Below are positions 12,981 through 42,467 of a stretch of DNA of 64,000 nucleotides, piece by piece. The DNA is taken from the NCBI GenBank assembly GCA_001600695.1, contig BCKQ01000009.1, positions 328,913-392,912 on the forward strand, in the 5' to 3' direction. The notes beneath the pieces are model-generated. The model searched no databases and was not told where the DNA came from. It saw only the letters and a program-made list of their open reading frames with translations. A program made the translations under genes and the position numbers. Each line of letters starts with the position of its first letter. Within the stretch, counting starts at the first letter, position 1. The stretch comes from Ascoidea asiatica JCM 7603. Taxonomy: Eukaryota > Fungi > Ascomycota.

Positions 12981-14819
12981 ATGATTGGATTATCAAGAAG
13001 GTGGTTAAGGCAATTATCGTATCTATTAAATTTCCTTTTTTTTCTGGGGTTGATGCTAACACTTATTGATATATTTTATGCCAACTTGTTACCTAACTCA
13101 ATTCATCAACTTTTACCAAATGATCAACCTGATGATGTAATTGTCGATATAGAATTTAAGAAGTGTTTTAAACTTACAACAATTGAAAACTCCTGCAATA
13201 TAAAAGATAAATCAGGGTTGCAATGGGAAAAAATAGAAAAGGATTTATTTTTAAAAGATTCTTGGATAAATAACTATTTTATGTTCAAAAAAAGTATTCA
13301 AACCGTCACTTTGCTTGATACTACTTCTGGTTTTAGTGCTTTAAAAGATAAAAAGATTGTCTTGGACCTTGCCATTTTGGGTCCTGAAGATTTAAAAATC
13401 AAAGGCAACACTCAATATCCTTTCAAAATACTTGATGAGTTTAATTCCCATATTTTAAATAAACCCAGTTCTCAAAAATCATTACTAAATGCAAGGGGAC
13501 TTGAAGAGATCTCCAAGTTAGACAATATAGAAGATGATTCAAAAACTTTAAAAATGATTATACCTAAAATAAAAGATGTTAATGCTCTGGGTTGGCAAAA
13601 GAAAGAAAATGGTTTATGGGTTAAATATGGATCATATAGTGAAAAGAACTCTGTAACGGGGGTGGAGGTTTTAATGGGAGATGATGTGATTGAACCAAGG
13701 CCTCGTTGGACTTTAATTGAACAACCTCTTATAACAAAAAATGGAAAGTATAAGGCTTTTGTAACATTTAAAAAAGGAAATGTTCCTAAAGTTGAAACAC
13801 CCATACTTAAAGTCAACCAGGAGGGAAAATTCAAAATTCTTCAAGTTGCCGATTTGCATTTTTCAACCAACGTAGGTGATTGTAGAGATCCATTTCCTGC
13901 TGAATCTGCAAAAGGGTGTAAAGCTGATCCAAGAACTCGTGTTTTTGTTGAAAAGATTTTGGACATAGAGAAACCTGATATGATCGTTCTCACGGGAGAT
14001 CAGGTTTTTGGAAATGCAGCACCAGATGCTCAGACTGCTCTATTCAAAGCTGCATCATTATTTATCAAAAAAAAGATACCATTTGCAATAACGTTAGGAA
14101 ATCATGATGATGAAGGTGATCTAAGCCGTAAAAAAATGATGGATCTTGCATCCTCCTTACCATATTCAGTCTCGCAAGTAGGTCCCTCCGATATTGATGG
14201 ATTTGGAAATTACTTATTAACTGTTCAAGCTCCCAATACAAAACATCCTGCCATTTCATTATGGTTTTTAGATACTCATAAATATTCCCAAAGTCCTAAA
14301 ACGAATCCTGGATATGACTGGATTAAAGAAAATCAACTTAATTGGGTATTGAAAGAAAATACAAAATTAGAAGAATCAAAGCAACTGTATACTCATATAC
14401 ACCTATCAATGTCATTCTTTCATATTCCTCTTCCAGAATATAGAGAAATGGCAGATGATAAGTTAGTTGGAACATTCAAGGAAGGAATTACAGCTCCGAA
14501 ATATAATACAGGAGCTAGATCTTTATTTGGAAAACTTGGGGTTAGCATTATATCTGTAGGGCATGATCATTGCAACGATTACTGTTTATATCACACCACT
14601 AAATTGAATGATGAAAGTGAAAATAGTATGTGGTTATGTTACGGAGGTGCCGCTGGTGAAGGTGGGTATGCTGGCTATGGTGGTACATCTAGACGTGTTA
14701 GAATTTTTGACATTGATACAAATGCAAATGATATATATACTTGGAAAAGAGTGGAAGGAAATGAAGGAGAAGTTCTTGATAAACAATTGCTTGTTAGCGG
14801 CGGGTCTCCAATATTATGA
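12981..14819 (+). CDS. DCR2: Dcr2-family calcineurin-like metallophosphoesterase
   Basis: N-terminal TM anchor; motifs FKILQVADLH, TGDQ, GNHD, FHIP, GHDH, CYGG..GEGGYAGYGG. Confidence 0.88.
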   Translation: MIGLSRRWLRQLSYLLNFLFFLGLMLTLIDIFYANLLPNSIHQLLPNDQPDDVIVDIEFKKCFKLTTIENSCNIKDKSGLQWEKIEKDLFLKDSWINNYFMFKKSIQTVTLLDTTSGFSALKDKKIVLDLAILGPEDLKIKGNTQYPFKILDEFNSHILNKPSSQKSLLNARGLEEISKLDNIEDDSKTLKMIIPKIKDVNALGWQKKENGLWVKYGSYSEKNSVTGVEVLMGDDVIEPRPRWTLIEQPLITKNGKYKAFVTFKKGNVPKVETPILKVNQEGKFKILQVADLHFSTNVGDCRDPFPAESAKGCKADPRTRVFVEKILDIEKPDMIVLTGDQVFGNAAPDAQTALFKAASLFIKKKIPFAITLGNHDDEGDLSRKKMMDLASSLPYSVSQVGPSDIDGFGNYLLTVQAPNTKHPAISLWFLDTHKYSQSPKTNPGYDWIKENQLNWVLKENTKLEESKQLYTHIHLSMSFFHIPLPEYREMADDKLVGTFKEGITAPKYNTGARSLFGKLGVSIISVGHDHCNDYCLYHTTKLNDESENSMWLCYGGAAGEGGYAGYGGTSRRVRIFDIDTNANDIYTWKRVEGNEGEVLDKQLLVSGGSPIL

Positions 14820-15048
14820 TTGATTATTTTAATATGTGGTTTTAGCCTAATCGAATTTAAAATATTTTTGTTTTAATTAGAAAGTCGTTAATATACGAAG
14901 AATCTAATTACTAAATGTTGACAGTGCTAAATTTTAGGCTTGAAAAATAAAAAAATTTTACATTTCCTTAACATCAAAAAGTTTATTATTTGGGAAATAA
15001 GCAAAATTTCAAAATTAATGTTATATACTGTTTATATACAGCAAATAG

Positions 15049-17757
15049 CTAAAAGAAGATAAGACCGGTAAAAACCGTTATAAACCCAGACAATAAAGCA
15101 AAAGAAAATGATTTCGTGAAAATAGGGATTCCTATTCTTGCTGAATTACTTTCATTTTGATCATCGTGATTATTAAAAATAGAAGTAGAACCATAAGTTA
15201 AACTTTCCTCAGTGTCGCCTACCCATGAACTTTGATAAACAGTTGAGGTGTGGTCTATTGGTGGCTCAGTTATTATAGCTTCTCGACTAAATTGCAAGTC
15301 ATCTTCTATTGGCTTATCAGCATCATTATCGGATAATAACAATTCAGGAGTATTTTCCAACTTTTTTTCTTTTCGGAAACTGAAAAAATATTTTTGAGGA
15401 ACTCCAACAATATCATTTTCTGTTTTATAGCTTCTTTTAATTAAAGAAACAGTGTCATTTGAATAATAACTTTCTCTTCGAGAAGAGTCAAAAGGTTCTG
15501 GAAAACGAGGACCTGTGTAAGTTCCCCTTCTTCTAATTTCTGGTTCAGCATCATTTAAAATGTAAAAACCCCAACAACCACACCAGCAATCAGGAATTAA
15601 TGAATGTAAAAATTCAACTATTAAACATACAATAGCATCGATTAAACTAGCCTTGGGATGGATTAAAGCTAAAATCAACCAAATTAATGATTCAATTAGA
15701 TTGTGAATTTTATCTAAAATTGTTGGGCAATCACATCCACAAAAGGTATCTTCCAAAACTTTCAAAACCCAATCAAGAATATCAATTAAAATATCCAGAA
15801 TAAGTTTAATACCATTTATTCCAACATTTATCAATCTTATAACGATTATTAATATACATTTCAAAATATCTAAACCATCCTCAGCTAATTCACAGATGCA
15901 ATTACAGAGTTCATTAATACCTCTATGTCCTCCTTCATACAAGTGATGAATAATATGTATGAATTTTAGAATTAGATGCCTTTTATCTTTATGTAACTGT
16001 TTGATTATATGCTCCAAAAATTCTTTTATTTGACTTTTATCACATTCACCATCATAAATATCATAATAATCAAAATCTGTCCAATCCATACCTATTTTTC
16101 CTCCAGCTTTATAAATAATGTAATTATGCCATATATCATTTTGCTCAGGAGTCAATCTAATATGAGTTTCACCTTCATCATCTTCATGAACTTTAGAATG
16201 TTTTTGATACTCAAAATTATTCAAACCTTTGTCTTTCATGAAATTTGCTTTACCATTTTTTCGTTGTCTTTGCATTTTAGCTTCCTTATAGTCAGTTTCA
16301 CCTTCTTTTAAAAAATCTACTATTTTCTTTCTAGTTGACTTTTTCAAATCATCATTACCGATATTATTGAAATCATCACTATTATTTTTATCTTTCATAT
16401 TATCTAAATCTTCAGAACGATTAGGATCATTCATACTATTTTCAATACCTGAATCATCATTTGTATTAGATGATTTTCTAGAATTCTTTATTTTTTGACG
16501 GTTTTTAAATCTTTTTGTTGGTTCGACTATATCAGAATCATCCTGAATTGAATCATAGTCTATCTCGTCAATTTTTTTGAATTTGTTTCTACCTTTTCTA
16601 TATTTCTCTTGAAATTGGGACTTTGAATTCAAATTTTTCTCTTCAAATTCGGATTTAGATTTTTCCTTTTTCTTCTCTTTGGCTTTTTGTTTTTGTCGAT
16701 TTTTTTTATTCTTTGGCAAAATTTTTTTATCTTTCTCGAAAGATATTAAAGAATCAAAATCCGACATATCTTCAAACTTATGGTTGAAATCTTCAGTATA
16801 TTTTTGATCTAATTCATTAATATTATTTTTTGCTTTTTTTCTAGAATTATTATGCTTTGATTTAACCTTTGAAGGATTATCATTGTTGATTGTTTGATCA
16901 GAAATTTTTTTATCAAAATTGTTTAATTTTTCATGAAGGCCATAGCCAGTACCTAATTGATTCATACTGGGTTTACTGTTTGAATATTCATTTGGTATAT
17001 TTTTGTTTTTTCTGTTAGTGTTCATTTGTTTTTGTTTCTGAACTTTTTTAGATTCTTTTCTAGATTTGCCCTTTTTAACAGCATTTGATTTTCTAGAGGT
17101 TTTCATCCTTTTGCTATCAGTAAGAGCTAATATCTGCAAGTCTGAACTGTCATTGTCAATAATAATATTACTATCGATATTCGGATTATTATTTTGGTTT
17201 TCAAAGTTATCGGAAAAATCAATAGTTTCATCATTATTATCACTTTTATTTTCATTATAAATTGGTTCCATTGGTTCCATTGTTTCTGTTGATTCCCTTG
17301 AGTTATTTAAATCATTGGAAATAGATTGATATTGATTAGAATTTTGAGAATTTAATTTTTGTTCATTATATATAGTAAGTTGATCCAAATTTGTTAAAAA
17401 GATACCATTTGGATCAAAAGAACTTGGTTGGAAATTAGATTGAATAAAAGCTTTAATATCTTCTTTGAGTGATTCTGGATCTTTATTTTCAGACCATTTC
17501 ATTATTGTTTCATGATTTAAATGAATATTATTTTGATTTTCATTAAATTTATCAAAACTTTCATCTAAATGATTTTCATTTGAAATTGAGTTGAATAAAA
17601 TATCATCAATAAAAGTATTATCAGTAGAAAGTAAATTTGATTCTAGCTGAATTTCATCTCCATTAACAAAAATTTGACTTATAAAGACTGATTGAATTGA
17701 AAAAATATATAACAGACGAACAAATAAATTGTCTCCTGTTTTTCTTGACCTAACCAT
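15049..17757 (-). CDS. Orphan secreted, putatively GPI-anchored protein A with Cys-rich 18-aa-repeat helical core
   Basis: 902-aa ORF with N-terminal signal peptide, long charged disordered region, core homologous to the divergent neighbour, and hydrophobic C-terminal tail after NESNSA. Confidence 0.85.
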   Translation of the reverse strand: MVRSRKTGDNLFVRLLYIFSIQSVFISQIFVNGDEIQLESNLLSTDNTFIDDILFNSISNENHLDESFDKFNENQNNIHLNHETIMKWSENKDPESLKEDIKAFIQSNFQPSSFDPNGIFLTNLDQLTIYNEQKLNSQNSNQYQSISNDLNNSRESTETMEPMEPIYNENKSDNNDETIDFSDNFENQNNNPNIDSNIIIDNDSSDLQILALTDSKRMKTSRKSNAVKKGKSRKESKKVQKQKQMNTNRKNKNIPNEYSNSKPSMNQLGTGYGLHEKLNNFDKKISDQTINNDNPSKVKSKHNNSRKKAKNNINELDQKYTEDFNHKFEDMSDFDSLISFEKDKKILPKNKKNRQKQKAKEKKKEKSKSEFEEKNLNSKSQFQEKYRKGRNKFKKIDEIDYDSIQDDSDIVEPTKRFKNRQKIKNSRKSSNTNDDSGIENSMNDPNRSEDLDNMKDKNNSDDFNNIGNDDLKKSTRKKIVDFLKEGETDYKEAKMQRQRKNGKANFMKDKGLNNFEYQKHSKVHEDDEGETHIRLTPEQNDIWHNYIIYKAGGKIGMDWTDFDYYDIYDGECDKSQIKEFLEHIIKQLHKDKRHLILKFIHIIHHLYEGGHRGINELCNCICELAEDGLDILKCILIIVIRLINVGINGIKLILDILIDILDWVLKVLEDTFCGCDCPTILDKIHNLIESLIWLILALIHPKASLIDAIVCLIVEFLHSLIPDCWCGCWGFYILNDAEPEIRRRGTYTGPRFPEPFDSSRRESYYSNDTVSLIKRSYKTENDIVGVPQKYFFSFRKEKKLENTPELLLSDNDADKPIEDDLQFSREAIITEPPIDHTSTVYQSSWVGDTEESLTYGSTSIFNNHDDQNESNSARIGIPIFTKSFSFALLSGFITVFTGLIFF

Positions 17758-18133
17758 TTTCTTTAATTATACAAAAATATAGACATTGTCTTTCATTTAA
17801 ATGAAATATTTTTTTAAAAAATATGAATATTAATAAACGAATCGAAAAAACTATATATTATTAACAAATAATTCCAGCTACAAAGACATATAATAGATTT
17901 AGTAAGGCTTGATATCTTCTTTTTGATGGTTTATTCCCAATATATTTTATCTTTTTTCCAGTCACCAGTATTGTAGTGTTTCTGACTTTTGTTATTGTTG
18001 TTTTCTTCATAGTTCCCATAGTCAATGGTATCAGCAGTGCCAACAGCGCTTGTTTCTGTCTTGGTGCTCATATTTTGTTTTTGCATTAGAATCAAATGAA
18101 AATTAATGAGTGATTAATTGACGATTGACTGGC

Positions 18134-18147
18134 TTTGTGACACAAAA
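18134..18147. promoter_or_regulatory. Palindromic Ndt80/MSE-like element
   Basis: TTTGTG-A-CACAAA(A): GACACAAAA on + is a full gNCRCAAAW match; GTCACAAAG on - is a near match. Confidence 0.5.
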
Positions 18148-18830
18148 ACAAAAGAATAAAATTGAAGAAAATTAATTACTGTAAATACAGCTACAGTAAG
18201 TTAGAGTAAGTGTCCTATGGGTAAAAATAACAATTCAACTCTAATTAAATACTGTATTAATGCTATTGTTTATTTTATTATTGCCAATTACAGTTCGTGA
18301 GTGGCGTAGAGGAGGGTGCCTGGTACTGCGTTAGTGGCTCAAGATTACCAAAACCATCAAAATCACCAAAATCACCAATGAAACAATTCTACAGCATTGC
18401 AAATAAGATTGTAGATGATTTTAAAGTACATTTCCGAGATGGTGTTCCTACTGAACAGCGTAATTCCCTAGGTCATGGGTTTCCTGATAATCCAAGGTCA
18501 CCAAATATAAATAGTGTCGAAGTGTGATTAATAGGTGTTGATGTCTTTGTGGTGTATCTTTCTCCATTACTATACTGAAATTAGCTGTAAAAGAGTTCTA
18601 TATATTATGATTATCCTAATTCTGGTGTTTAGTGAGTTGATGATTATGAGGTTTTTACCGAGTTTTCGAGATAACTGAAAATTTGAAGCATGCTTCATTA
18701 CTTTTGCTACTTTCAATATATTACTTTGAGAAAATATTTGAACTTTTTCTAAAAAGAATTCCTAAAGTTTTTTGAAGGAGACTATTTTTTTTTTTTAATA
18801 AGCAAAAACAAATTGAAAAGAAAATCAGCA

Positions 18831-20942
18831 ATGATTGAAGTTCGAATTTATCACTTTACTTTTATCTTTGTTTTTTACTTCTCATTTATTTCTTTTTCTC
18901 TTCCTGTTTTGGATAATATAAATAATTCTACAAATTTAATTTCAAATCAAAGTCTGAGAAATTCTAATACAAATGAAAATATAATTGATCACACTAATTA
19001 TAATCTTAATGATCGACTTTCAAAAAGAATCATTTCTTCAGAAGATTCTAGTGAAATTTCTAGTGAAATTTATGTAGGTGAAGGAAATCAAAATGAAGAT
19101 TCTCCAGATTCAAAATCTATGATTCTTTCATATAATGATCATGTAAAAGATTTAGGCTCGACACCAAGTAGAAAATCTACCGCTATTAATAAAGACAGAA
19201 AACTTAATGGAAATCTTAAAAAACCAATCAAAAATAACAACCAACTATCCCAATCCAAAGATAATATATCTCAACAATCTCCTTCTTTAAATAATAATCA
19301 AAATAAACAGGATTTCAAACAACCAATTCTTAATCCACAAACAAATAAAGAAATAAATCAAAAGCCTCTCAAAGAAAAATTGTCCAAAGGTAAAGATAGT
19401 AAAGAAGCAATTATATATAATCCAACTTCTGAAGAAAAATCGAAGCATGTTAAACAGATTAAAAAGTCAAAAGATATGATTGATGTTATTGAAGAAGTTG
19501 AAAAAAAATATTTTAAAGATAAAGGTCATTCCAGTTTTTTCAAAAGATCAAAAAAATCTAAGTCAAAAACTGACCAACTTCAACCAACCTCTTCTGAACA
19601 TAATAATGCTGATTATGGTAAACCTCTTGAGCAAATAGATCAAGAACAATGGAAAAATTATATATCTTATGATGGTAAGATTGATGGAAATATTAATTGG
19701 AGTGATTATCAAAAATTTGATATATTTATGGGTGAATGTAGTAAAAAAAAATTAAAGGAATTTATTTGTGCTTTATTAGAAGAATTAGAAGAAGAAGAAA
19801 GAAAGATTATTGCTTGTATTATCGATATTTTATGTCATTTGAATGAAGGTGGAAGAAGAGGGGTAGAATTATTAGTCGATTTAATTTTATGCTTAGGGGA
19901 AAAGGCTTTAGAAGCTTTGAAATGTATAATAGTTTTAATACATCGTTTAATTCAATGTGGTATTGATGGAATAAAAATGATATTACATTGTATATGTGAA
20001 ACTTTACAAATAGTTAATGAAGATTTGGAAGAGAAACTTTGTGATTGTTTTTGTCCAAACAGAAAAAAAATTATAGATAGTTTTCTTTCAGCTTTAGTAT
20101 CTTGGACTGCATATGAGTGGAATTATAGAACTGAAATTATCAAGGGTTTAAGACATTTTTTTAAAATTGATAAAGATTGCTGGTGTGACTGTTCAGGCCA
20201 TTTCAAGCAAGCGATTGAATATTTTCAAAGCTTTAGTCTTGATGAAGAAGGTAATGAATTCAATAACTCAAGTATGGATTATATTGATTATTATTTAACT
20301 TATGGACCGGATCCTAGATTTCAAATGAAAAGAGCTCGAAATAATATTGAAATTGATAATGATCTAAAATCTCAAAGTGTGGAAACACAAAGCAATTCAG
20401 AGTTTGATCGATTGGTTATGGATAAATATAAAGATCTTTTTAGAAAATTAAGATTAGATAATAAATCATTTGGAACTTTAAATGACGATCAATTTGAAGT
20501 TATGCAAAGTCCAGAAGAAATAGTTTCAAAAGATGAAAATAAGCTTGAAGATGAAATTATTTTAGATGATTACATACTTGAAAAGGATCTTATTCTTGAG
20601 GTATCATTAGAAGATAATGACAAAGAGGCTTTTCAAGATCTTGATTTATTTTCAGAAAAATTCATGGAGGAAAATTTACTGGTTTTAGATTCAAAAAATG
20701 AAATAAACAAAGAAAAAGAAATTAGCATAAAGAATCAATCAGTACCAAAACAAAGCAATCTAACTTTTTTGAAAACGCCTAACATCAGCCAATTCCAGCA
20801 GTTTCACTGCAACGAAAATGATACTCATTGTATAAGTGCTAATAAAAAGATATCCTCTTTCGGTATTTACTCTTACAATTATAATTTTTGGTGCATAATA
20901 AGTTCTACTCTTTTGATTGCTCTTAGCTTTTTGATTTTTTAA
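18831..20942 (+). CDS. Orphan secreted, putatively GPI-anchored protein B, paralog of A
   Basis: First ATG is at 18831 (the track's 18813 start is TTG); signal peptide IYHFTFIFVFYFSFISFS, shared core WKNYISY..GEC..EGGRRG..LKCI..GIDGIK..CDCFCP..DCWCDC, hydrophobic C-terminal tail. Confidence 0.85.
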   Translation: MIEVRIYHFTFIFVFYFSFISFSLPVLDNINNSTNLISNQSLRNSNTNENIIDHTNYNLNDRLSKRIISSEDSSEISSEIYVGEGNQNEDSPDSKSMILSYNDHVKDLGSTPSRKSTAINKDRKLNGNLKKPIKNNNQLSQSKDNISQQSPSLNNNQNKQDFKQPILNPQTNKEINQKPLKEKLSKGKDSKEAIIYNPTSEEKSKHVKQIKKSKDMIDVIEEVEKKYFKDKGHSSFFKRSKKSKSKTDQLQPTSSEHNNADYGKPLEQIDQEQWKNYISYDGKIDGNINWSDYQKFDIFMGECSKKKLKEFICALLEELEEEERKIIACIIDILCHLNEGGRRGVELLVDLILCLGEKALEALKCIIVLIHRLIQCGIDGIKMILHCICETLQIVNEDLEEKLCDCFCPNRKKIIDSFLSALVSWTAYEWNYRTEIIKGLRHFFKIDKDCWCDCSGHFKQAIEYFQSFSLDEEGNEFNNSSMDYIDYYLTYGPDPRFQMKRARNNIEIDNDLKSQSVETQSNSEFDRLVMDKYKDLFRKLRLDNKSFGTLNDDQFEVMQSPEEIVSKDENKLEDEIILDDYILEKDLILEVSLEDNDKEAFQDLDLFSEKFMEENLLVLDSKNEINKEKEISIKNQSVPKQSNLTFLKTPNISQFQQFHCNENDTHCISANKKISSFGIYSYNYNFWCIISSTLLIALSFLIF

Positions 20943-21339
20943 TATTTTGAGTTTTCAATATTTTTGTTATTTTGAAAGTTTTGTTTTTTTAATTTTTTGT
21001 TTTTTCGTATTATTCACTATATTATACATATATATAAATTATATACAGCAAAATATATTCAATGAGCTTATTTGATAAGTCTTAAATACTTTACCGATAA
21101 GGTAAATTTTTCAAGATATAAAAAGATCTAAATTAATCTAATGAGAATGGCAAAAAAAAGTTTTTTATAAGGGGGGTAAACTATCAAGACAAATAATCAT
21201 AAAATATAAAGCTACAAGTTTTTTTCTCTTGAGCTGATCAGAGAATATTTTTTATAAAAAAAAGTGATAAAAGAAAAAATTAATTTAACCTTCACATTAT
21301 AACATCAAAAATAAATTTTTGTGATTGTCATTGAAAACA

Positions 21340-22260
21340 TCATAGTGTTGGCTGCCCAACCAGAAAAACCATCACTTTGAATTCTGGAATCGTTGTTTTT
21401 GTTTGTGTTTCCTTTGTTTTCCCACCATTTTTCTTATCTTCTGCGATTTTAGCCATAGTTCTTCTTTTGATTTTTCTTGGCCTTTTGAAGTTCATGTCAT
21501 GCAAATGATTATATGGTTTCTCAATTGATGATTTACTTTTCAGCACATTTTTTCTCTCCGTTTTTCTCTGATAATCTCGTTTTATAAATTTTGAAGATTG
21601 ATTGTTGATATCCGGTTCCCTAAATTTAGCAATAGATTTGATTTCTTTGATTCTTTCAACATCCTTTATATTTGCTGCAACTTTTTCATTTTCTTTGACT
21701 TGATTATTCATATTTACAAGAACCTTTGGGTTGATAATTTTTTCAATGTTAGTAGCAAAATCATTAAAATTTTCTACATTATTTCCATATAAATCATTTT
21801 CACCAATTCTTTTGGATATTTCTTCTTCTGTGAGGATATAATCGAAGTCTTCAAAATCGAGTGATTTTAAGCTTCTTTTATCGAAGTCGAATGCAACAGA
21901 CTCAGAATTATTGTTTTTTTCAAACCTGAGTGTGTTTAAATCTATATCATCATTGATATCGGTATTATCAAGTAGTTCAATAAAATTTGAAAATCCATCG
22001 TCAAACAGTAAATTATCATCATAATTCAATGGAATATTACTAAATGAGTAGTCATTATCCTTCCTTATATTCAATTCTTCCGAACTATCAAACTTATTTG
22101 AGTTGCTCTGGTCAAAATTATATTCATCCTTTTTATTTTCCGATTCTTCAAAAGCATCAAACTTGTTTGCAATAATTTGTTCAAAAATATTATTATTTTC
22201 ATCCAGCATCTCATAGAAATTAATAGGACCTGAATTTTGATCTTTTGAGAGAAAATGCAT
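21340..22260 (-). CDS. Hypothetical protein with acidic N-terminus and basic C-terminus
   Basis: 306-aa ATG-initiated ORF, too long for chance in AT-rich DNA; no family recognised. Confidence 0.65.
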   Translation of the reverse strand: MHFLSKDQNSGPINFYEMLDENNNIFEQIIANKFDAFEESENKKDEYNFDQSNSNKFDSSEELNIRKDNDYSFSNIPLNYDDNLLFDDGFSNFIELLDNTDINDDIDLNTLRFEKNNNSESVAFDFDKRSLKSLDFEDFDYILTEEEISKRIGENDLYGNNVENFNDFATNIEKIINPKVLVNMNNQVKENEKVAANIKDVERIKEIKSIAKFREPDINNQSSKFIKRDYQRKTERKNVLKSKSSIEKPYNHLHDMNFKRPRKIKRRTMAKIAEDKKNGGKTKETQTKTTIPEFKVMVFLVGQPTL

Positions 22261-24989
22261 ATTAAAATTTCGTCTAGAATAATGATAAGAGTAATTATCA
22301 AAAGAAAATAAATTATTAGGTTCTTCAAAGTATTAGTAACTTCTGAAAAAAAATTTTCAATTTGAATTAATTTATATCGAGGGATATAAAGAACTATTTA
22401 TATCAAAAGAGCAGCATAAATGTAATTATTAATGAAAAGTGAAAAAAAAATTCTTCAATTGAATGATAAAATAGCTTTATGGAAAAAAACCAGATATTCA
22501 TGTTAAAGACAACTGTTAAACAAAAAATTAACTGAAAGTATAAGATATATGTTCAATATAATTCAAAAATAATTTGGGACATCTGAAAGATAATTGAAAA
22601 CAATCAAACCATAATCTTGAATTTCTGTACCAAAAACCTTTCGACAATAACTAATAACCAAAACAATTTTACTAATTAGGAAAGTGAATTTAACAAATTT
22701 TTAATATTAATAAATATTTTTTTTTTTTGAGAATCAAGAGTTTATTATTTCCTATTTTGACAGATTTTTATTTTGAATATGCGAAGTAAGATATTATAGT
22801 GAAATAAGCCAAAAAACCAAAAAAGCTCAAAAAAATCAAATTAAAAAAAAAAAAATTCAAAAAAAAATTATAAAAACCAAGAGAGAATTCATAATATTAT
22901 GCATTGACAAATCGAATAACGAAGGTAAATTTTTTAAAAAGTATACAGCTCCTTAGATTTAAGACTAGTTAAAGACAAAATGAAGTTTATAAAATTCAAT
23001 GGATAATAATGATTCATAGAACGTACTTATTATACATAATTCTTAATTGATATTTCCTCAATAAGAAATAGGGTTTATTAGGAAGAATGGCTTTATGTGA
23101 ATATAATTGAATGCAAATGTATAAATTTGATTAAAATAGAACATAATAGAATAAAAAAGAATACAATTGATCTAACGTAGTTTGAAAATCTAGTAACACT
23201 ACTTTATCATTATTAATATAAATGAATAATTTGAAATAATTTGTTTTTATAGTAATAAATAAATAAATAGACTTTATAAATATGGTACAATTGATAGATG
23301 TTAAAAGAGTCTAAATGTCGAACTCAGTACGTAAATTTCATTGTGTGAAGATAGTAAAAGAACGTCTTTTTTACTTTAATACTATTATCATTATCATTAT
23401 CACCAATATCAAATGATTTAAACTCCTTATACGTAATATGATTATTTTAAAAAATTTATCAAGTAATTGAGACAGTGTTTAATACTGTAATGATTTGAAT
23501 TATGATTGATAGGGAAAGAAATAAATATGAAAAAGGATTATTATTTTTCCCAACAGGTAGTGTAATAAGTTTAATAAATGTACAATTAAGAATATAATTG
23601 ATTATCAAAGGAGGTTCTAAATTTCTCAGCTGTTCTGATTTTCATGAATGTTCTAAGTTTCAGAAATCCTCTTGAAGTCTTTGAAGTTTTATCATGTTCA
23701 AAGATTCCTCAAGTGCCTCAAATTCCTCATATCCCTTCAAGGAATAAATAAAATAATCACACTCAAAACCTGAAAAACAGCAAATGAATAATACTGAATC
23801 AAATTAAATACGCAGTGGATATAATAAGAGTTTATGAATACGGAGACCGAGGTGATTGAAATCATTTACATTAAACCTATGTTTCTGTCATTTAAGTCAC
23901 CATTATTTGAAATAGGAGTGTCATAAGTAAGTAACTGATAATTCTTTTAGCATCGTTATATCGATAGCAGTAGATTAAGCACTATCTGAAGCAGAAACTT
24001 AACAACTGTTTAGTAGGATCTGGGTGGTCTTAGATTAGATCTATCTTGGAACAATTAATTTACGAAAATTTTCATTCTCATTATTGTAATTAGTATTAGT
24101 ATTAGTATCGATATTTTTATTAGCAGTAGTTTTAGCATCAGTATCAATGATTATCAGATTACCAAGATTAGACCTTCTTTTAAAAAAAGTGAGATTATTT
24201 AGACCACAATCACAATCACAACCACAACCACAAAGTGCTTTTGCCTGTTCCGGCCTCGGTGCATATTGAATTGGTGCACCGGTCTCACTAGCGCACAAGA
24301 CTCGCGCGTGTATTTTGGGATCGGCGTCGGTGGCATAGACCCCTGGTTTTTGGTGATTGAGGGCTGGTGTTTAAAATATTGTGGCTGGAACTTTTGCGTT
24401 GCGCTGTGCTCTGTCCCAGGATACGGATGCCATTATACCCGGATTGGTTTCGGATCAAACGGATTCACTCCGGACCTTGGCGGGAGTCAACTGCAGAAAT
24501 GCTATACGAGCAGCGTGAAGTTACTTCGCTACCGGCACCACCAATTCTAGACAGCCATAACTGTTAAATAGAATTCATACAGCTTTAACTTTACCCGTAA
24601 CGTTACAATACTGATAGTGACACAAGAATAATAACGACAATTATTATTGCAATTTGTTTTATTGAATTTACTTTATTATTAACTACCTAATAACAATACA
24701 AATACTAATCCATTACATTTTTATTAATTATTATTGCTTTAATTCTTCTAACTTTTCCAATCCTATTTTTTTCAATTATCCAGATAAATCAACCATTTAT
24801 TTACTCTCCTTTAAAAGTATATTCCTATTGTCCTTATTTTCAGCTAAAATTTACTGGAATGCTATTTCAATATTCTTCATCTTTTTGCATTTCAATGGTT
24901 ACAAAATCTTTACAATTCAATTCCATTTCATTAATATTATAATCAATCAATCAATCCATTATATAATTAATTAATCATTATATAAAAGA

Positions 24990-26258
24990 ATGTCAAGTAC
25001 GATATTAGGTGTATTTTTTGCAATCACCGGAAATTTATTTATAGCATTATCTTTGAATATTCAAAAATTTGCTCATAAAAGATTATCTGAAAGACAAAAT
25101 GAATTGAATGTAGTAACTGAATTAAATGAATTGAATGATTTTAATGAAGTAAATGATGAGGATTATACCCCAAGTACTCCATTACTATATACATCATCAT
25201 CACGACTGCAGTCTTCTTTATATTCTAATCAATTTCCTAATCAATTCCCAAATCAATTTTCAAATCAATATACTTCTTTTGAATCATCATCTTCATTATC
25301 TTCTCCTTCACCTCAAAATTCCAATTTTTCTTTTCCTTCAGTAACTCCAAAAAATAGTAAAAATCAAAAAAATAATCTAAATGTTCAAAATAATTACTTA
25401 AAAAGTAATTGGTGGTGGTTAGGAACAATAATAATGACTTTTGGTGAATGTGGTAATTTTATTGCTTATGGATTTGCTCCTGTTTATATAGTCTCTCCAC
25501 TTGGTATTGTGACAATAATTTCAAATTCTTTATTAGCTCCAATTGTATTTAAAGAAAAATTTAATTTAAAACGGTTTATAGGTACTTCAATTGCAGCTTT
25601 TGGTGTTTTATTTATTTTTTTATCTTCTTTAACAATTAATCAAATAGATCCTCCAAATCCAACTCCAGGTCCTAATGAAGATCCAATTCAATATGTTAAT
25701 CAAACCATTTATTCTTTAACTTATTTATTTTATCTATTAATATCTTTAGTTTTGATATCTTTATTATTATTCATAATTCATATTATAAATCAAAAAAATA
25801 TAAATTCAAATTTAACTACAAGACTAAAATCAATTTATGTTTTTAGTAATTTATTACTTGTTGCTGTTTTTGGATCTCATACTGCAATTTCAACTAAATG
25901 TATTTCAATGATGTTATTATCAAAAGATCTAAATTCGGATTTAGATTCTAATAATGATCTATTACCTTCTTCTTCTTTTCTTTTAAATCCTTTAACTTAT
26001 TACTTATTAGCTATATTAGTTTCAACTGCAATTCTTCAAGTTAAATATTTGAATAATACTTTACAAATTGAAGACTCTTCAAAAATTGTTCCAATTCATT
26101 TTGTTTGTTTTACAATTACTGTACTTGTAACTTCTACAATAATATTTAAAGATTATAGAGATAAAACTATTTTACAACTCTTATCTTTTTTATTTGGTTG
26201 TTCATTAACTTTTTTTGGAGTATTTTTAATTTCAAGTAATGATTCAAAATCAAAATAA
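24990..26258 (+). CDS. NIPA-family (DUF803) Mg2+ transporter
   Basis: GNLFIALSLNIQK, YLKSNWWWLG, GECGNFIAYGFAP..VSPLG, QVKYLN, VPIHFV; multiple TM helices. Confidence 0.9.
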   Translation: MSSTILGVFFAITGNLFIALSLNIQKFAHKRLSERQNELNVVTELNELNDFNEVNDEDYTPSTPLLYTSSSRLQSSLYSNQFPNQFPNQFSNQYTSFESSSSLSSPSPQNSNFSFPSVTPKNSKNQKNNLNVQNNYLKSNWWWLGTIIMTFGECGNFIAYGFAPVYIVSPLGIVTIISNSLLAPIVFKEKFNLKRFIGTSIAAFGVLFIFLSSLTINQIDPPNPTPGPNEDPIQYVNQTIYSLTYLFYLLISLVLISLLLFIIHIINQKNINSNLTTRLKSIYVFSNLLLVAVFGSHTAISTKCISMMLLSKDLNSDLDSNNDLLPSSSFLLNPLTYYLLAILVSTAILQVKYLNNTLQIEDSSKIVPIHFVCFTITVLVTSTIIFKDYRDKTILQLLSFLFGCSLTFFGVFLISSNDSKSK

Positions 26259-39775: not shown

Positions 39776-41908
39776 ATGTCAAAGATTTCATTATCTTCAT
39801 TAAATAGAAGTATAAATAAAGTTATAAATGATTTTTCAAAAAATTATTTTGGTTTTAATAAAGCTGTTAAATTATTAAATTCAAATAATTCTAATGATAA
39901 TTCTAATAATAATATTAATAATAAATCAAATGAAATTCAAAATATTTTAAATAATGATTATTTAAATTTAATTTCTCTTTCAAATATCTATAAAACTACA
40001 TTGATTAATTTATTTTGGGAATTTAATAAAAATAAAATAAATTTAAATAATAAAAACTTAAGTAATAATAATTTAAATGTTTTTATAAGTAATAAAAATA
40101 ATTTAATTTTAAATAATAATTATAAAATTAATAAAGATTTATCAATAGTTTTAAATAATTTATCAATTATTTCAAATCATATATTATTATTTAATTATAA
40201 TTTTATTTTAAATAAACATAATATTAATATTATTAATAATAATCAATTAATTAAGAATAATTATTATAATCAATTTGAAAAATTTTGGAAATTAAATTAT
40301 TTAATTTCAAATAAAAATGATTTACATTTAAATATTAATGAAAATATAAATTCGAATAATAAAAATGATTTAAAAATTTATAAAAATTATAAATTATTTA
40401 ATGATCTTATAATCTCAATTTCTTTAAATAATTTAATTCAATTTTTTAAAAAAAATTATAATAATGAAATTAATTATAATTTATTATTAATTCATTTTAA
40501 TAATTTTAATCAAATAGAATTTAATGAAATTAATTATAAAGAAAATTTAATAAATTTTTATTTAAAAATATTTAAAAAAAAAATTAAAATTTTGGATATA
40601 AAAATTTTATTAGATATAAGTAAAATTTTAATAAATTTTAATAAAATTAATGAATTAATTGAAATTATTAATTTAAATAATTGGAATTTTAATAAATTTC
40701 CAAATAGAAAATCATATTTAATTCAAATTTTAGATTTATTTTTAAATAGTAATCAAGAAAGTAATAATGAAATGAAGTTGAAATTTATAAATGAAATTAT
40801 AAAAATATTAATAAAAGATAAAGAAAGTGAGAAGATTTTAATTAAAGATAATAAATTGAATAATAAATTTTTTAAGAATCTTAAATATAAAATTGAAAAT
40901 GATAAAATTTTATATTTTATTATAAGTTTATGTAATATAATAAGTAAAAATGATTTATTAATTAATGATTATAAAATTTTATTAAAAGATTTTATAATTA
41001 TTAATACTGATAAAGATAATACTGGTAAAGATAAAGATAAAGATAAAGATAAAAATTTAAAAGAATTTTATTATTTAATGATTGAAAAATATTTTATAAT
41101 GAGTTTAGTTAAATTTAATAAAATTTATATTGTTAAAGAATTAATTGAGAATATAGATAATGAATTTTATGAAAAAATGGAAAATAATGAAATTTTAAAA
41201 AATAAAATCTTTTATAATAATAATAACTTTAGAAATAAAAATGAAAGTTTTAAAATAAAATTTAATTCATTTTGTTTAGAAGAATTTTCAAAAAATGAAG
41301 AAAATTTTATTGCTTCAAAGAAATTAATTGAATATGTTATTAAAGATTTTAAAGATCAAAAATTTTTAATTAATGAAAAAATTAAATTAAGAAAATTGAT
41401 AAAAAGAAATAAAATTGAAAAAAATAAATTTAAAATTGAGAAATTAAAATATAATAAAGATTTAAAATTATATAAAAAATATATAAGATCAGTTGGAATT
41501 GGATTAATTAAATCAAATAATTATAATAATAATTATAATAATATTAAATCTAATTTTTTTAATTTAAGATATTCAATAAAATATAATAAAATTTTAAAAA
41601 AAAATTTTAAAAGTACAATTGGTAAAAGATATTTAATTTTATTAATTTCAAATTATTTAAAAATTGTTAAAAGATCAAATAAAGGATCATTTAATAAATT
41701 TAAATATTTATTAAAATTTATTAAAAATTTTAAAATTGAAGATAAATTTTTTAAAAAATGGAAAAAAATTTTAAATTTTATGAAATTAAATAATAGAGGA
41801 TTTTGGAGTTTAGAAAATTTATCAAAATTTAAAAAAACAAATTATTTTAATAATGATTTTGATAATAATGATTTTGATAATAATGATAATGACATTAATA
41901 ATAAGTGA
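39776..41908 (+). CDS. Hypothetical N/K/I/L/F-rich protein, possibly mitochondrial
   Basis: 2.1-kb stop-free frame in roughly 90% AT DNA; basic/hydroxylated N-terminus; no family recognised. Confidence 0.7.
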   Translation: MSKISLSSLNRSINKVINDFSKNYFGFNKAVKLLNSNNSNDNSNNNINNKSNEIQNILNNDYLNLISLSNIYKTTLINLFWEFNKNKINLNNKNLSNNNLNVFISNKNNLILNNNYKINKDLSIVLNNLSIISNHILLFNYNFILNKHNINIINNNQLIKNNYYNQFEKFWKLNYLISNKNDLHLNINENINSNNKNDLKIYKNYKLFNDLIISISLNNLIQFFKKNYNNEINYNLLLIHFNNFNQIEFNEINYKENLINFYLKIFKKKIKILDIKILLDISKILINFNKINELIEIINLNNWNFNKFPNRKSYLIQILDLFLNSNQESNNEMKLKFINEIIKILIKDKESEKILIKDNKLNNKFFKNLKYKIENDKILYFIISLCNIISKNDLLINDYKILLKDFIIINTDKDNTGKDKDKDKDKNLKEFYYLMIEKYFIMSLVKFNKIYIVKELIENIDNEFYEKMENNEILKNKIFYNNNNFRNKNESFKIKFNSFCLEEFSKNEENFIASKKLIEYVIKDFKDQKFLINEKIKLRKLIKRNKIEKNKFKIEKLKYNKDLKLYKKYIRSVGIGLIKSNNYNNNYNNIKSNFFNLRYSIKYNKILKKNFKSTIGKRYLILLISNYLKIVKRSNKGSFNKFKYLLKFIKNFKIEDKFFKKWKKILNFMKLNNRGFWSLENLSKFKKTNYFNNDFDNNDFDNNDNDINNK

Positions 41909-42467
41909 ATTCAATGGAAATTTTGTAAATAGTTGTAATATAAATTAATATAAATTATGGATAAATTATGGATAAATTTCACTTATATAGATAAAAGTAG
42001 TTTGAGAACATTTCTGACCAATCACAGCAAAGAAAAACGTAATTGCAGAATCGGGAAATATCTGCCACCGGTTTGAAGCCGATGTTTGATGGATTCCGGG
42101 CGAATTCCGGTTCTGGCGGCAAAAACAGCAAAAACAGCAAAAGAAGAAGAAGAACAACAACAACGACAGGAGAAGGAGAAGAAGAAGAAGAAGAAGAAGA
42201 AGCAGCAACAGAAACAGCTGGCACTGCTTTCACAGGAGCAGATTGAGAACTCGGTGGCGTTGGGATTGGAGACAGCAAAGAGGAAAGTAGCAGTAGTAGC
42301 AGCAGTAGAGCAATAGAGCAGTAGAGCAGCATTCAATTAAAAACAGAAATATAAAGTAGATTATTATATTCAATTTATGAATCTTATTTAAATATATTCT
42401 TACAGTTCATACTTTCCTGTGATTGAATTAAATGAATGTATTCTTATACAATATTCAATAAAAAAAC

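What the first reader, a model, noticed from the sequence alone, without database searches (positions are those of the whole stretch)
15049..20942. Head-to-head pair of paralogous orphan surface proteins sharing an unrecognised Cys-rich domain
Seen: two divergently transcribed genes about 1.07 kb apart share one architecture: signal peptide, long disordered charged region, core of about 185 aa, spacer, and a GPI-like hydrophobic tail (both end LIF/LIFF). The cores (about 15568-16131 and 19650-20198) align almost without gaps: WxNYIxY..WxD..DIxxGECxK..KEF..HLxEGGxRG..LKCI..RLIxxGIxGIKxIL..CxCxCP..DCWCxCxG. The flanks have diverged beyond recognition, which points to an old duplication with selection on the core only. 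I recognise no fungal family for it (not CFEM, hydrophobin, Sps2/Ecm33, Als, Flo or Pir). Inference: a co-regulated two-component cell- or spore-surface system, such as a heteromeric coat or a recognition pair.
Basis: partly seen in the sequence, partly recalled or inferred. Interest (0 to 1): 0.85.

Follow-up and report, generated by a model that had tools for sequence, protein, structure and literature searches.

The report
Yeast spore-coat candidate protein pair
Two neighbouring genes of a little-studied filamentous yeast encode secreted proteins of an undescribed family, found only in this yeast group, whose promoters carry the switch for spore formation, so they probably help build the spore wall.

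Summary
Observation confirmed. Genes A (15049-17757, -) and B (18831-20942, +) start 1073 bp apart and share a ~185-aa core (34% identity, E 4e-33) with no Pfam, PDB or Atlas match. The genome is most likely Ascoidea asiatica. A profile search of 1.84 billion representatives found six homologs: A. rubescens and three unnamed yeasts, two showing CUG-Ser coding (probably Saccharomycopsis). Two of those yeasts also keep two paralogs, but unlinked, and the syntenic A. rubescens locus holds only B, so head-to-head is not conserved. The core is five 18-residue amphipathic helical repeats plus CxCxCP and C[WT]CxC, followed by a KR site in every member. The Ndt80 motif CACAAA lies upstream of all six intact loci (background 14/56) but not of a pseudogene; in this genome it marks GAS2/GAS4/SPR3/CDA-like genes and not their vegetative paralogs (5/6 vs 0/7). 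Best reading: an Ndt80-induced, Kex2-processed ascospore-wall protein family (0.6); a disulfide-linked amphipathic coat is inferred, not shown. Fold unresolved (pLDDT 45); no expression data. Heteromer or recognition pair is unsupported. The scan had noted this only on this same stretch.

The parts
15049..17757 (-). Gene A, 902 aa: signal peptide, long polar/charged region, core, KR site, spacer, hydrophobic tail
17659..17757 (-). A: probable signal peptide (aa 1-33)
   Evidence: hydropathy; inferred
15562..16131 (-). A: conserved core (aa 543-732)
15766..16035 (-). A: five 18-residue amphipathic helical repeats (aa 575-664)
15724..15741 (-). A: CxCxCP motif
15574..15588 (-). A: CWCxC motif
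15433..15438 (-). A: Lys-Arg, candidate Kex2 site 45 aa after the core
15052..15147 (-). A: GPI-signal-like end (small residues, spacer, hydrophobic tail)
   Evidence: rule-based
17758..18830 (.). Shared divergent promoter, 1073 bp; no small ORF in it was judged a gene
18133..18147 (.). Back-to-back Ndt80/MSE sites: 18139-18147 (+) fits YGNCRCAAAW fully with its 5' base and 12/13 of the Sum1-type MSE; 18133-18141 (-) holds a second CACAAA. About 385 bp from A, 690 bp from B
18545..18553 (-). Third CACAAA core site, about 280 bp upstream of B
18831..20942 (+). Gene B, 703 aa, same layout; ortholog of A. rubescens ASCRUDRAFT_10031
18831..18899 (+). B: probable signal peptide (aa 1-23)
   Evidence: inferred
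19650..20204 (+). B: conserved core (aa 274-458)
19746..20015 (+). B: five 18-residue amphipathic helical repeats (aa 306-395)
20040..20057 (+). B: CxCxCP motif
20178..20192 (+). B: CWCxC motif
20328..20333 (+). B: Lys-Arg, candidate Kex2 site 45 aa after the core
20844..20939 (+). B: GPI-like or transmembrane hydrophobic end
   Evidence: rule-based

Best explanation
A and B are two old paralogs of an Ascoideales-restricted family of ascospore-wall proteins. [quoted passage not shown] (2) The signal peptide takes them into the secretory path, which at that stage feeds the prospore-membrane lumen (inferred from S. cerevisiae, PMC3084680). (3) The hydrophobic tail, probably a GPI signal, tethers A and B-type precursors; a Kex2-type cut at the conserved KR behind the core frees the core-bearing part (site conservation shown; cleavage inferred). 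(4) The five amphipathic 18-mers pack with each other or on a lipid or hydrophobic surface, and the two tri-cysteine motifs plus one further conserved Cys fix the assembly by disulfides, giving a protein layer in or on the spore wall (periodicity and Cys conservation shown; assembly is inference, about 0.35 on its own). The head-to-head layout lets one MSE serve both genes in this species but is dispensable.
For: CACAAA (Ndt80 consensus, PMC5391208) upstream of 6/6 intact family loci vs 14/56 neighbouring genes; leaving out the window 5/5, p=0.002. Strict GNCRCAAAW in 4/6 vs 2/56; without the window 3/5, p=0.003; CACAAAAA is the only 8-mer with two or more G/C shared by four promoters. The broken copy P0006 has no site. 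Control in this genome: CACAAA within 500 bp of 5/6 inferred sporulation genes (GAS2-, GAS4-, SPR3-, SPR28-, CDA-, CDC10-like) vs 0/7 vegetative paralogs, p=0.005. NDT80-family genes are present and sporulation is Ndt80's ancestral role (PMC5391208). KR 20-57 aa behind the core in all seven intact members, chance 0.18 each, about 0.001 for four lineages. Hydrophobic-moment peak at 99 degrees in all intact members; lag-18 self-similarity +0.18 vs -0.80 +/- 0.09 in shuffles. Seven Cys kept in all intact members. DIT1 not found here, as in S. pombe, which uses a protein coat instead (PMC4019487).
Against: The Ndt80 regulon is heavily rewired between yeasts and controls biofilm in C. albicans (PMC5391208). 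The two species-Y promoters hold only the short core, one just 26 bp from the ATG. Control genes were assigned by domain layout and nearest PDB hit, not by a tree with named orthologs. The DIT1 blank is not proof of absence (one search says so). AlphaFold2 did not resolve the fold (pLDDT 39 and 45), so a plain soluble helical bundle is not excluded. The long flanks are lysine- and arginine-rich, so some KR sites arise by chance.
Confidence: 0.6

Rival explanations
1. Sporulation-induced but not a coat: the core is a soluble or membrane-tethered helical bundle that binds or carries lipid, or shapes the prospore membrane (for instance the brim of hat-shaped spores), like HsbA/Mp1p or saposin-type bundles in action.
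For: Same promoter evidence. Hydrophobic face about 200 degrees wide with Gly at repeat joints; AF2 breaks the helices at three joints; weak VIA hits are short helical solenoids, Z<=6.8.
Against: No Pfam or structure match to HsbA, saposin or apolipophorin families; nothing ties it to spore shape: hat-shaped spores occur in many orders where no homolog was found.
Confidence: 0.15
2. Vegetative or hyphal surface protein (repellent or adhesin) under a rewired Ndt80, working like Kex2-processed amphipathic repellents of Ustilago (Rep1; from memory).
For: Signal peptide, KR site, amphipathic helices, GPI-like tail; the genome has 2-3 NDT80-family genes; C. albicans Ndt80 uses the same motif for biofilm genes (PMC5391208).
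Against: In this genome the motif sits at sporulation-type paralogs and not at vegetative ones; no KR between the repeats; no Ser/Thr-rich stalk.
Confidence: 0.12
3. Obligate heteromer or recognition pair: one anchored and one free subunit must meet.
For: Three of four examined species with intact genes keep two divergent copies; in species X and Y one has a hydrophobic tail and the other has none.
Against: Only one copy seen for A. rubescens; orthology of A to the tail-less type is only moderately supported (85/87; independent duplications not rejected, AU p=0.097); net charge of the repeats is not complementary across species (A -1/B -5; X -1/-3; Y 0/-7); redundant paralog pairs are the rule in spore-wall genes (PMC3744438).
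Confidence: 0.1
4. Membrane-lytic precursor (ascus opening, killer-toxin-like, or poison-antidote drive pair).
For: Kex2-type site and strongly hydrophobic helices (19-mer hydropathy up to 2.2 in A); meiotic promoter; linked pair.
Against: One or two copies per genome, purifying selection and no core polymorphism in species X; linkage not conserved; no match to toxin families or folds.
Confidence: 0.03

Closest known systems
S. cerevisiae OSW4/OSW6 (YJL038c/YJL037w) and OSW7/SHE10 outer-spore-wall paralog pairs (PMC3744438)
   Same: Paralog pairs with predicted signal peptides, sporulation-induced, redundant in outer spore wall assembly; the OSW4/OSW6 ORF names indicate adjacent genes on opposite strands.
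   Different: No sequence match (they are not among the six hits); they serve the dityrosine layer, whereas DIT1 was not found here; no 18-mer or tri-Cys core is known for them.
S. pombe Isp3 spore coat (PMC4019487)
   Same: Protein layer on the spore of a yeast without DIT1; needs a reducing agent to dissolve, so probably disulfide-linked.
   Different: [quoted passage not shown]
SPS18-SPS19 shared promoter with a Sum1/Ndt80 MSE (PMC2784042)
   Same: One MSE in a divergent promoter; the window's site fits the same two consensus sequences.
   Different: SPS18 and SPS19 are unrelated to each other and to this family.
HsbA/Mp1p, hydrophobins, CFEM, Sps2/Ecm33, Ustilago Rep1 (recalled from memory)
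   Same: Secreted or GPI-anchored fungal surface proteins with helical or Cys-rich domains; Rep1 is Kex2-processed and amphipathic.
   Different: No Pfam hit for any member above a curated cut-off; Cys spacing (two CxCxC plus one) fits neither the 8-Cys hydrophobin nor the CFEM pattern; repeats are not separated by KR.

Membership tests
Any Pfam family (CFEM, hydrophobin, HsbA, saposin, Ecm33/Sps2, Flo, Als, Pir) | HMM match above the curated cut-off | tested here: not met
   none for A or B; scattered weak hits, each in one of eight members
Hydrophobin / CFEM | Eight Cys in the family spacing | tested here: not met
   seven conserved Cys as C ... CxCxCP ... CxCxC, all-helical core
HsbA/Mp1p, saposin, ARM/HEAT bundles | Structural match of the fold | tested here: inconclusive
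   model pLDDT 45; Foldseek best E 0.75, Atlas TM<=0.40, VIA Z<=6.8; designed-armadillo sequence hits cover only profile positions 51-87
Ndt80 (middle sporulation) regulon | MSE in the promoter, conserved in relatives | tested here: met
Ndt80 (middle sporulation) regulon | Ndt80 binding and Ndt80-dependent induction in sporulation | not testable with these tools
GPI-anchored proteins | Signal peptide, small omega residues, spacer, C-terminal hydrophobic tail without cytosolic end | tested here: inconclusive
   fits by rule for A, B, P0001, P0002, P0003; absent in P0004, P0005; no predictor run
Kex2-processed precursors | Conserved Lys-Arg site | tested here: met
   KR 20-57 aa behind the core in 7/7 intact members; cleavage itself untested
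Outer spore wall proteins (Osw4/6, Osw7/She10, Isp3) | Sequence homology | tested here: not met
   six hits only, none of them
Outer spore wall proteins (Osw4/6, Osw7/She10, Isp3) | Location in the spore wall and spore-wall defect on deletion | not testable with these tools
   needs experiment

The most novel reading that the evidence does not exclude
Ascoideales replaced the dityrosine layer by a secreted two-subunit protein coat: Ndt80-induced precursors are released by Kex2, and their 18-residue amphipathic repeats polymerise at the spore surface and are locked by CxCxC disulfides. That would be a third solution for the outer ascospore layer, beside dityrosine and Isp3, with a new fold.
Probability: 0.2. 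Interest if true: 0.75.

Novelty: new variant of a known kind. Interest (0 to 1): 0.48.

Why it matters
Outer ascospore walls are understood in two species only (dityrosine in S. cerevisiae, Isp3 in S. pombe). An order-restricted, possibly ~200-million-year-old family with a conserved sporulation switch gives a concrete handle on how other yeasts finish their spores, in a group that includes the food yeast Saccharomycopsis fibuligera. The domain has no family model and no resolved fold. It is a sound new family with a testable role, not a new kind of system.

Tried and rejected
Word searches: B core gave only P0001, A core nothing, 8-row profile only known members. Atlas feature searches blank. 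Two AF2 models were low-confidence and three fold searches gave nothing usable. Paper searches for the A. rubescens identifiers and for the run accessions found nothing; the Rep1 paper was not held. A helix motif upstream of the core looked shared by eye, but is not significant in A (score 0.4) and only weak between Ascoidea B and the second type (best E 0.006): rejected as evidence. Charge complementarity of the paralogs: rejected. Recent tandem duplication: rejected. Conserved head-to-head cluster: rejected. Dibasic sites in front of the core are not conserved (none as KR/RR in A. rubescens' region just before the core). Species X, Y, Z could not be named; no synteny links their loci to the window.

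Full report
Observation. The window holds gene A (15049-17757, minus strand, 902 aa) and gene B (ATG 18831 to 20942, plus strand, 703 aa), divergent, with 1073 bp between the starts. Their cores (A543-732, B274-458) align at 34% identity with one 5-residue gap, E 4e-33, and nothing else aligns. Each has a hydrophobic N-terminus, a long polar and basic region, the core, a spacer and a hydrophobic end. Pfam gives nothing; the genome has exactly these two copies. The genome has 20.3 Mb in 71 contigs; the A. asiatica assembly has 71 records (PMC6041473) and the nearest named homolog is from A. rubescens, so the source is very probably Ascoidea asiatica (inference).

Family. A profile of three cores scored against 1.84 billion representatives gave six proteins at E<=0.001: P0001 (A. 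rubescens, 58% to the B core), P0002 and P0003 (43% and 33% to B), and P0004-P0006 (24-31% to A or B). P0002 and P0004 come from one species (X; neighbours share clusters with assembly JXWR01); P0003 and P0005 come from one sequencing run (Y); P0006 (Z) is a broken copy with an in-frame stop, a frameshift, an early stop and a lost Cys. In Y, CTG codons face Ser or Thr in orthologs of this genome 9 times of 14 and Leu once; in X they face only polar residues or Pro, 5 of 5. That fits Saccharomycopsis, which reads CUG as Ser (PMC6041473); the well-annotated Serinales gave no hit. Z is unplaced. So the family looks restricted to Ascoideales, whose common origin that paper dates to 190-230 Mya. 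One representative per 50% cluster is shown, so more members may hide behind these six.

History and layout. The tree puts B with P0001 (100/100), these with P0002/P0003 (85/87), and P0004-6 together (100/99), with A between. A and B as sisters is rejected (AU p=0.0004); an Ascoidea-only clade is not (p=0.097). The duplication is thus older than the A. asiatica/A. rubescens split; whether it is one event at the base of the order or two is open. The core is under purifying selection: dN about 0.30 with saturated dS between the B orthologs, and all 12 amino-acid polymorphisms among seven full-length P0002 variants fall outside the core (22% of the length; p about 0.05). The A. rubescens locus is syntenic (VPS24, DCR2-like, NIPA, decarboxylase) but holds only B, inverted, with a myosin I gene where A stands. 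In X and Y the paralogs have unrelated neighbours. Head-to-head is therefore specific to this species among those seen. P0004 and P0005 have signal peptides but end in basic, non-hydrophobic tails.

Anatomy of the core. After a short W..NY..DW..D lead, about 90 residues form five 18-residue repeats without indels in intact members. The hydrophobic moment peaks at 99 degrees in all seven; family-wide self-similarity is +0.18 at lag 18 and +0.17 at lag 36, against -0.24 to -0.54 at other lags and -0.80 +/- 0.09 in shuffles. Positions 3, 4, 6, 7, 8, 10, 11 and 14 are hydrophobic, a face about 200 degrees wide, with Gly at positions 17, 18 and 3. CxCxCP, two more helices and C[WT]CxC follow; with one upstream Cys, seven Cys are kept in all intact members. 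A Lys-Arg pair lies 20-57 residues behind the core in all seven and in the pseudogene. AF2 gives an all-helical chain at pLDDT 39 and 45; fold searches are uninformative. The fold is unresolved, not shown to be new.

Regulation. The site at 18139-18147 fits the Ndt80 consensus YGNCRCAAAW and 12 of 13 letters of the Sum1-type MSE (PMC2784042), with a second CACAAA on the other strand at 18133-18141. Strict sites are rare here (3 in 64 kb). Strict sites also lie 166 bp upstream of the A. rubescens gene, 207 bp upstream of P0002 and 161 bp upstream of the annotated P0004 start. Strict: 4/6 intact loci vs 2/56 neighbours; without the window 3/5, p=0.003. The published cross-species motif CACAAA (PMC5391208): 6/6 vs 14/56; without the window p=0.002. 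The pseudogene has none. As a control I took families with sporulation and vegetative paralogs from this genome. The two GAS genes without a Ser/Thr stalk (one with X8 and best hit Gas2; one without), the divergent Cdc12-like and Shs1/Cdc11-like septins, the single chitin deacetylase and CDC10 were classed as sporulation-type; GAS2 and GAS4 are sporulation-specific in S. cerevisiae (PMC3084680), the rest from my own knowledge. CACAAA lies within 500 bp of 5/6 of these and 0/7 of the other GAS and septin genes (p=0.005; 6/6 vs 0/7 at 600 bp). CDC3 was left out because its start was unclear. I made the final classing after seeing the site list, so this control is supportive and not blind. NDT80-family genes are present; DIT1 was not found, with the tool's warning that this does not prove absence.

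Mechanism. Shown: conserved MSE, signal-like and tail-like ends, conserved KR, 18-mer amphipathic repeats, conserved Cys. Inferred: mid-sporulation expression, delivery to the prospore-membrane lumen, tethering, Kex2 release, and assembly into a disulfide-linked amphipathic layer of the ascospore wall. I give 0.6 to a spore-wall role as a whole and about 0.35 to the coat detail. Rivals: lipid-binding or membrane-shaping sporulation protein (0.15), vegetative repellent or adhesin under a rewired Ndt80 (0.12), obligate heteromer (0.10), lytic or drive pair (0.03).

Comparison. It works like the redundant, secreted, sporulation-induced paralog pairs OSW4/OSW6 and OSW7/SHE10 (PMC3744438) and may do the job of S. 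pombe Isp3 (PMC4019487), but it is homologous to none of them and belongs to no Pfam family. No paper names the A. rubescens protein.

Limits. No signal-peptide or GPI predictor was available. Species X, Y and Z are unnamed.

Verdict. Real, undescribed, order-restricted family; probably ascospore-wall proteins under Ndt80; the head-to-head arrangement is incidental. New variant of a known kind; interest 0.48.

Noticed in passing
L003:10001-12939 (A. rubescens ASCRUDRAFT_10031): The public gene model looks wrong at the 5' end: it splices in an upstream exon and so lacks a signal peptide, while an in-frame ATG at L003:10726 gives an unspliced 737-aa ORF with a clear signal peptide and an MSE 166 bp upstream.
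   Followed up: yes
L012:9652-11075: Pseudogene of the family in species Z: stop, frameshift at an A-run, early stop, lost Cys, no MSE. May mark a lineage that no longer sporulates, or assembly errors.
   Followed up: partly
G000 whole genome: No DIT1-family match and a single chitin deacetylase; the outer spore wall may differ from that of S. cerevisiae.
   Followed up: partly
G000:C4:1223941-1224879 (L044): GAS4-like gene with a strict MSE at -345 but no hydrophobic C-terminal tail, so apparently not GPI-anchored.
   Followed up: partly
window 14819-24990 versus L003: Local rearrangement: A. rubescens has myosin I between DCR2 and B; the window has gene A there, B inverted, a 306-aa orphan (21340-22260), and no myosin match anywhere in the 64 kb.
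   Followed up: partly
window 21340-22260: 306-aa acidic-then-basic orphan with no Pfam family above cut-off and no match in the syntenic A. rubescens locus.
   Followed up: partly
G000:C9:298294-299277, C4:1355309-1356058, C12:522137-522661: Three NDT80/PhoG-family loci; the C12 match contains stops (introns or a broken gene).
   Followed up: no
window 40001-42000: G+C falls to 10% with strong skew in and around a 710-aa low-complexity ORF.
   Followed up: no
P0014 (variant of P0002): An 817-aa variant frameshifted near the basic cluster behind the core, losing the hydrophobic tail; single contig, may be an assembly error.
   Followed up: no
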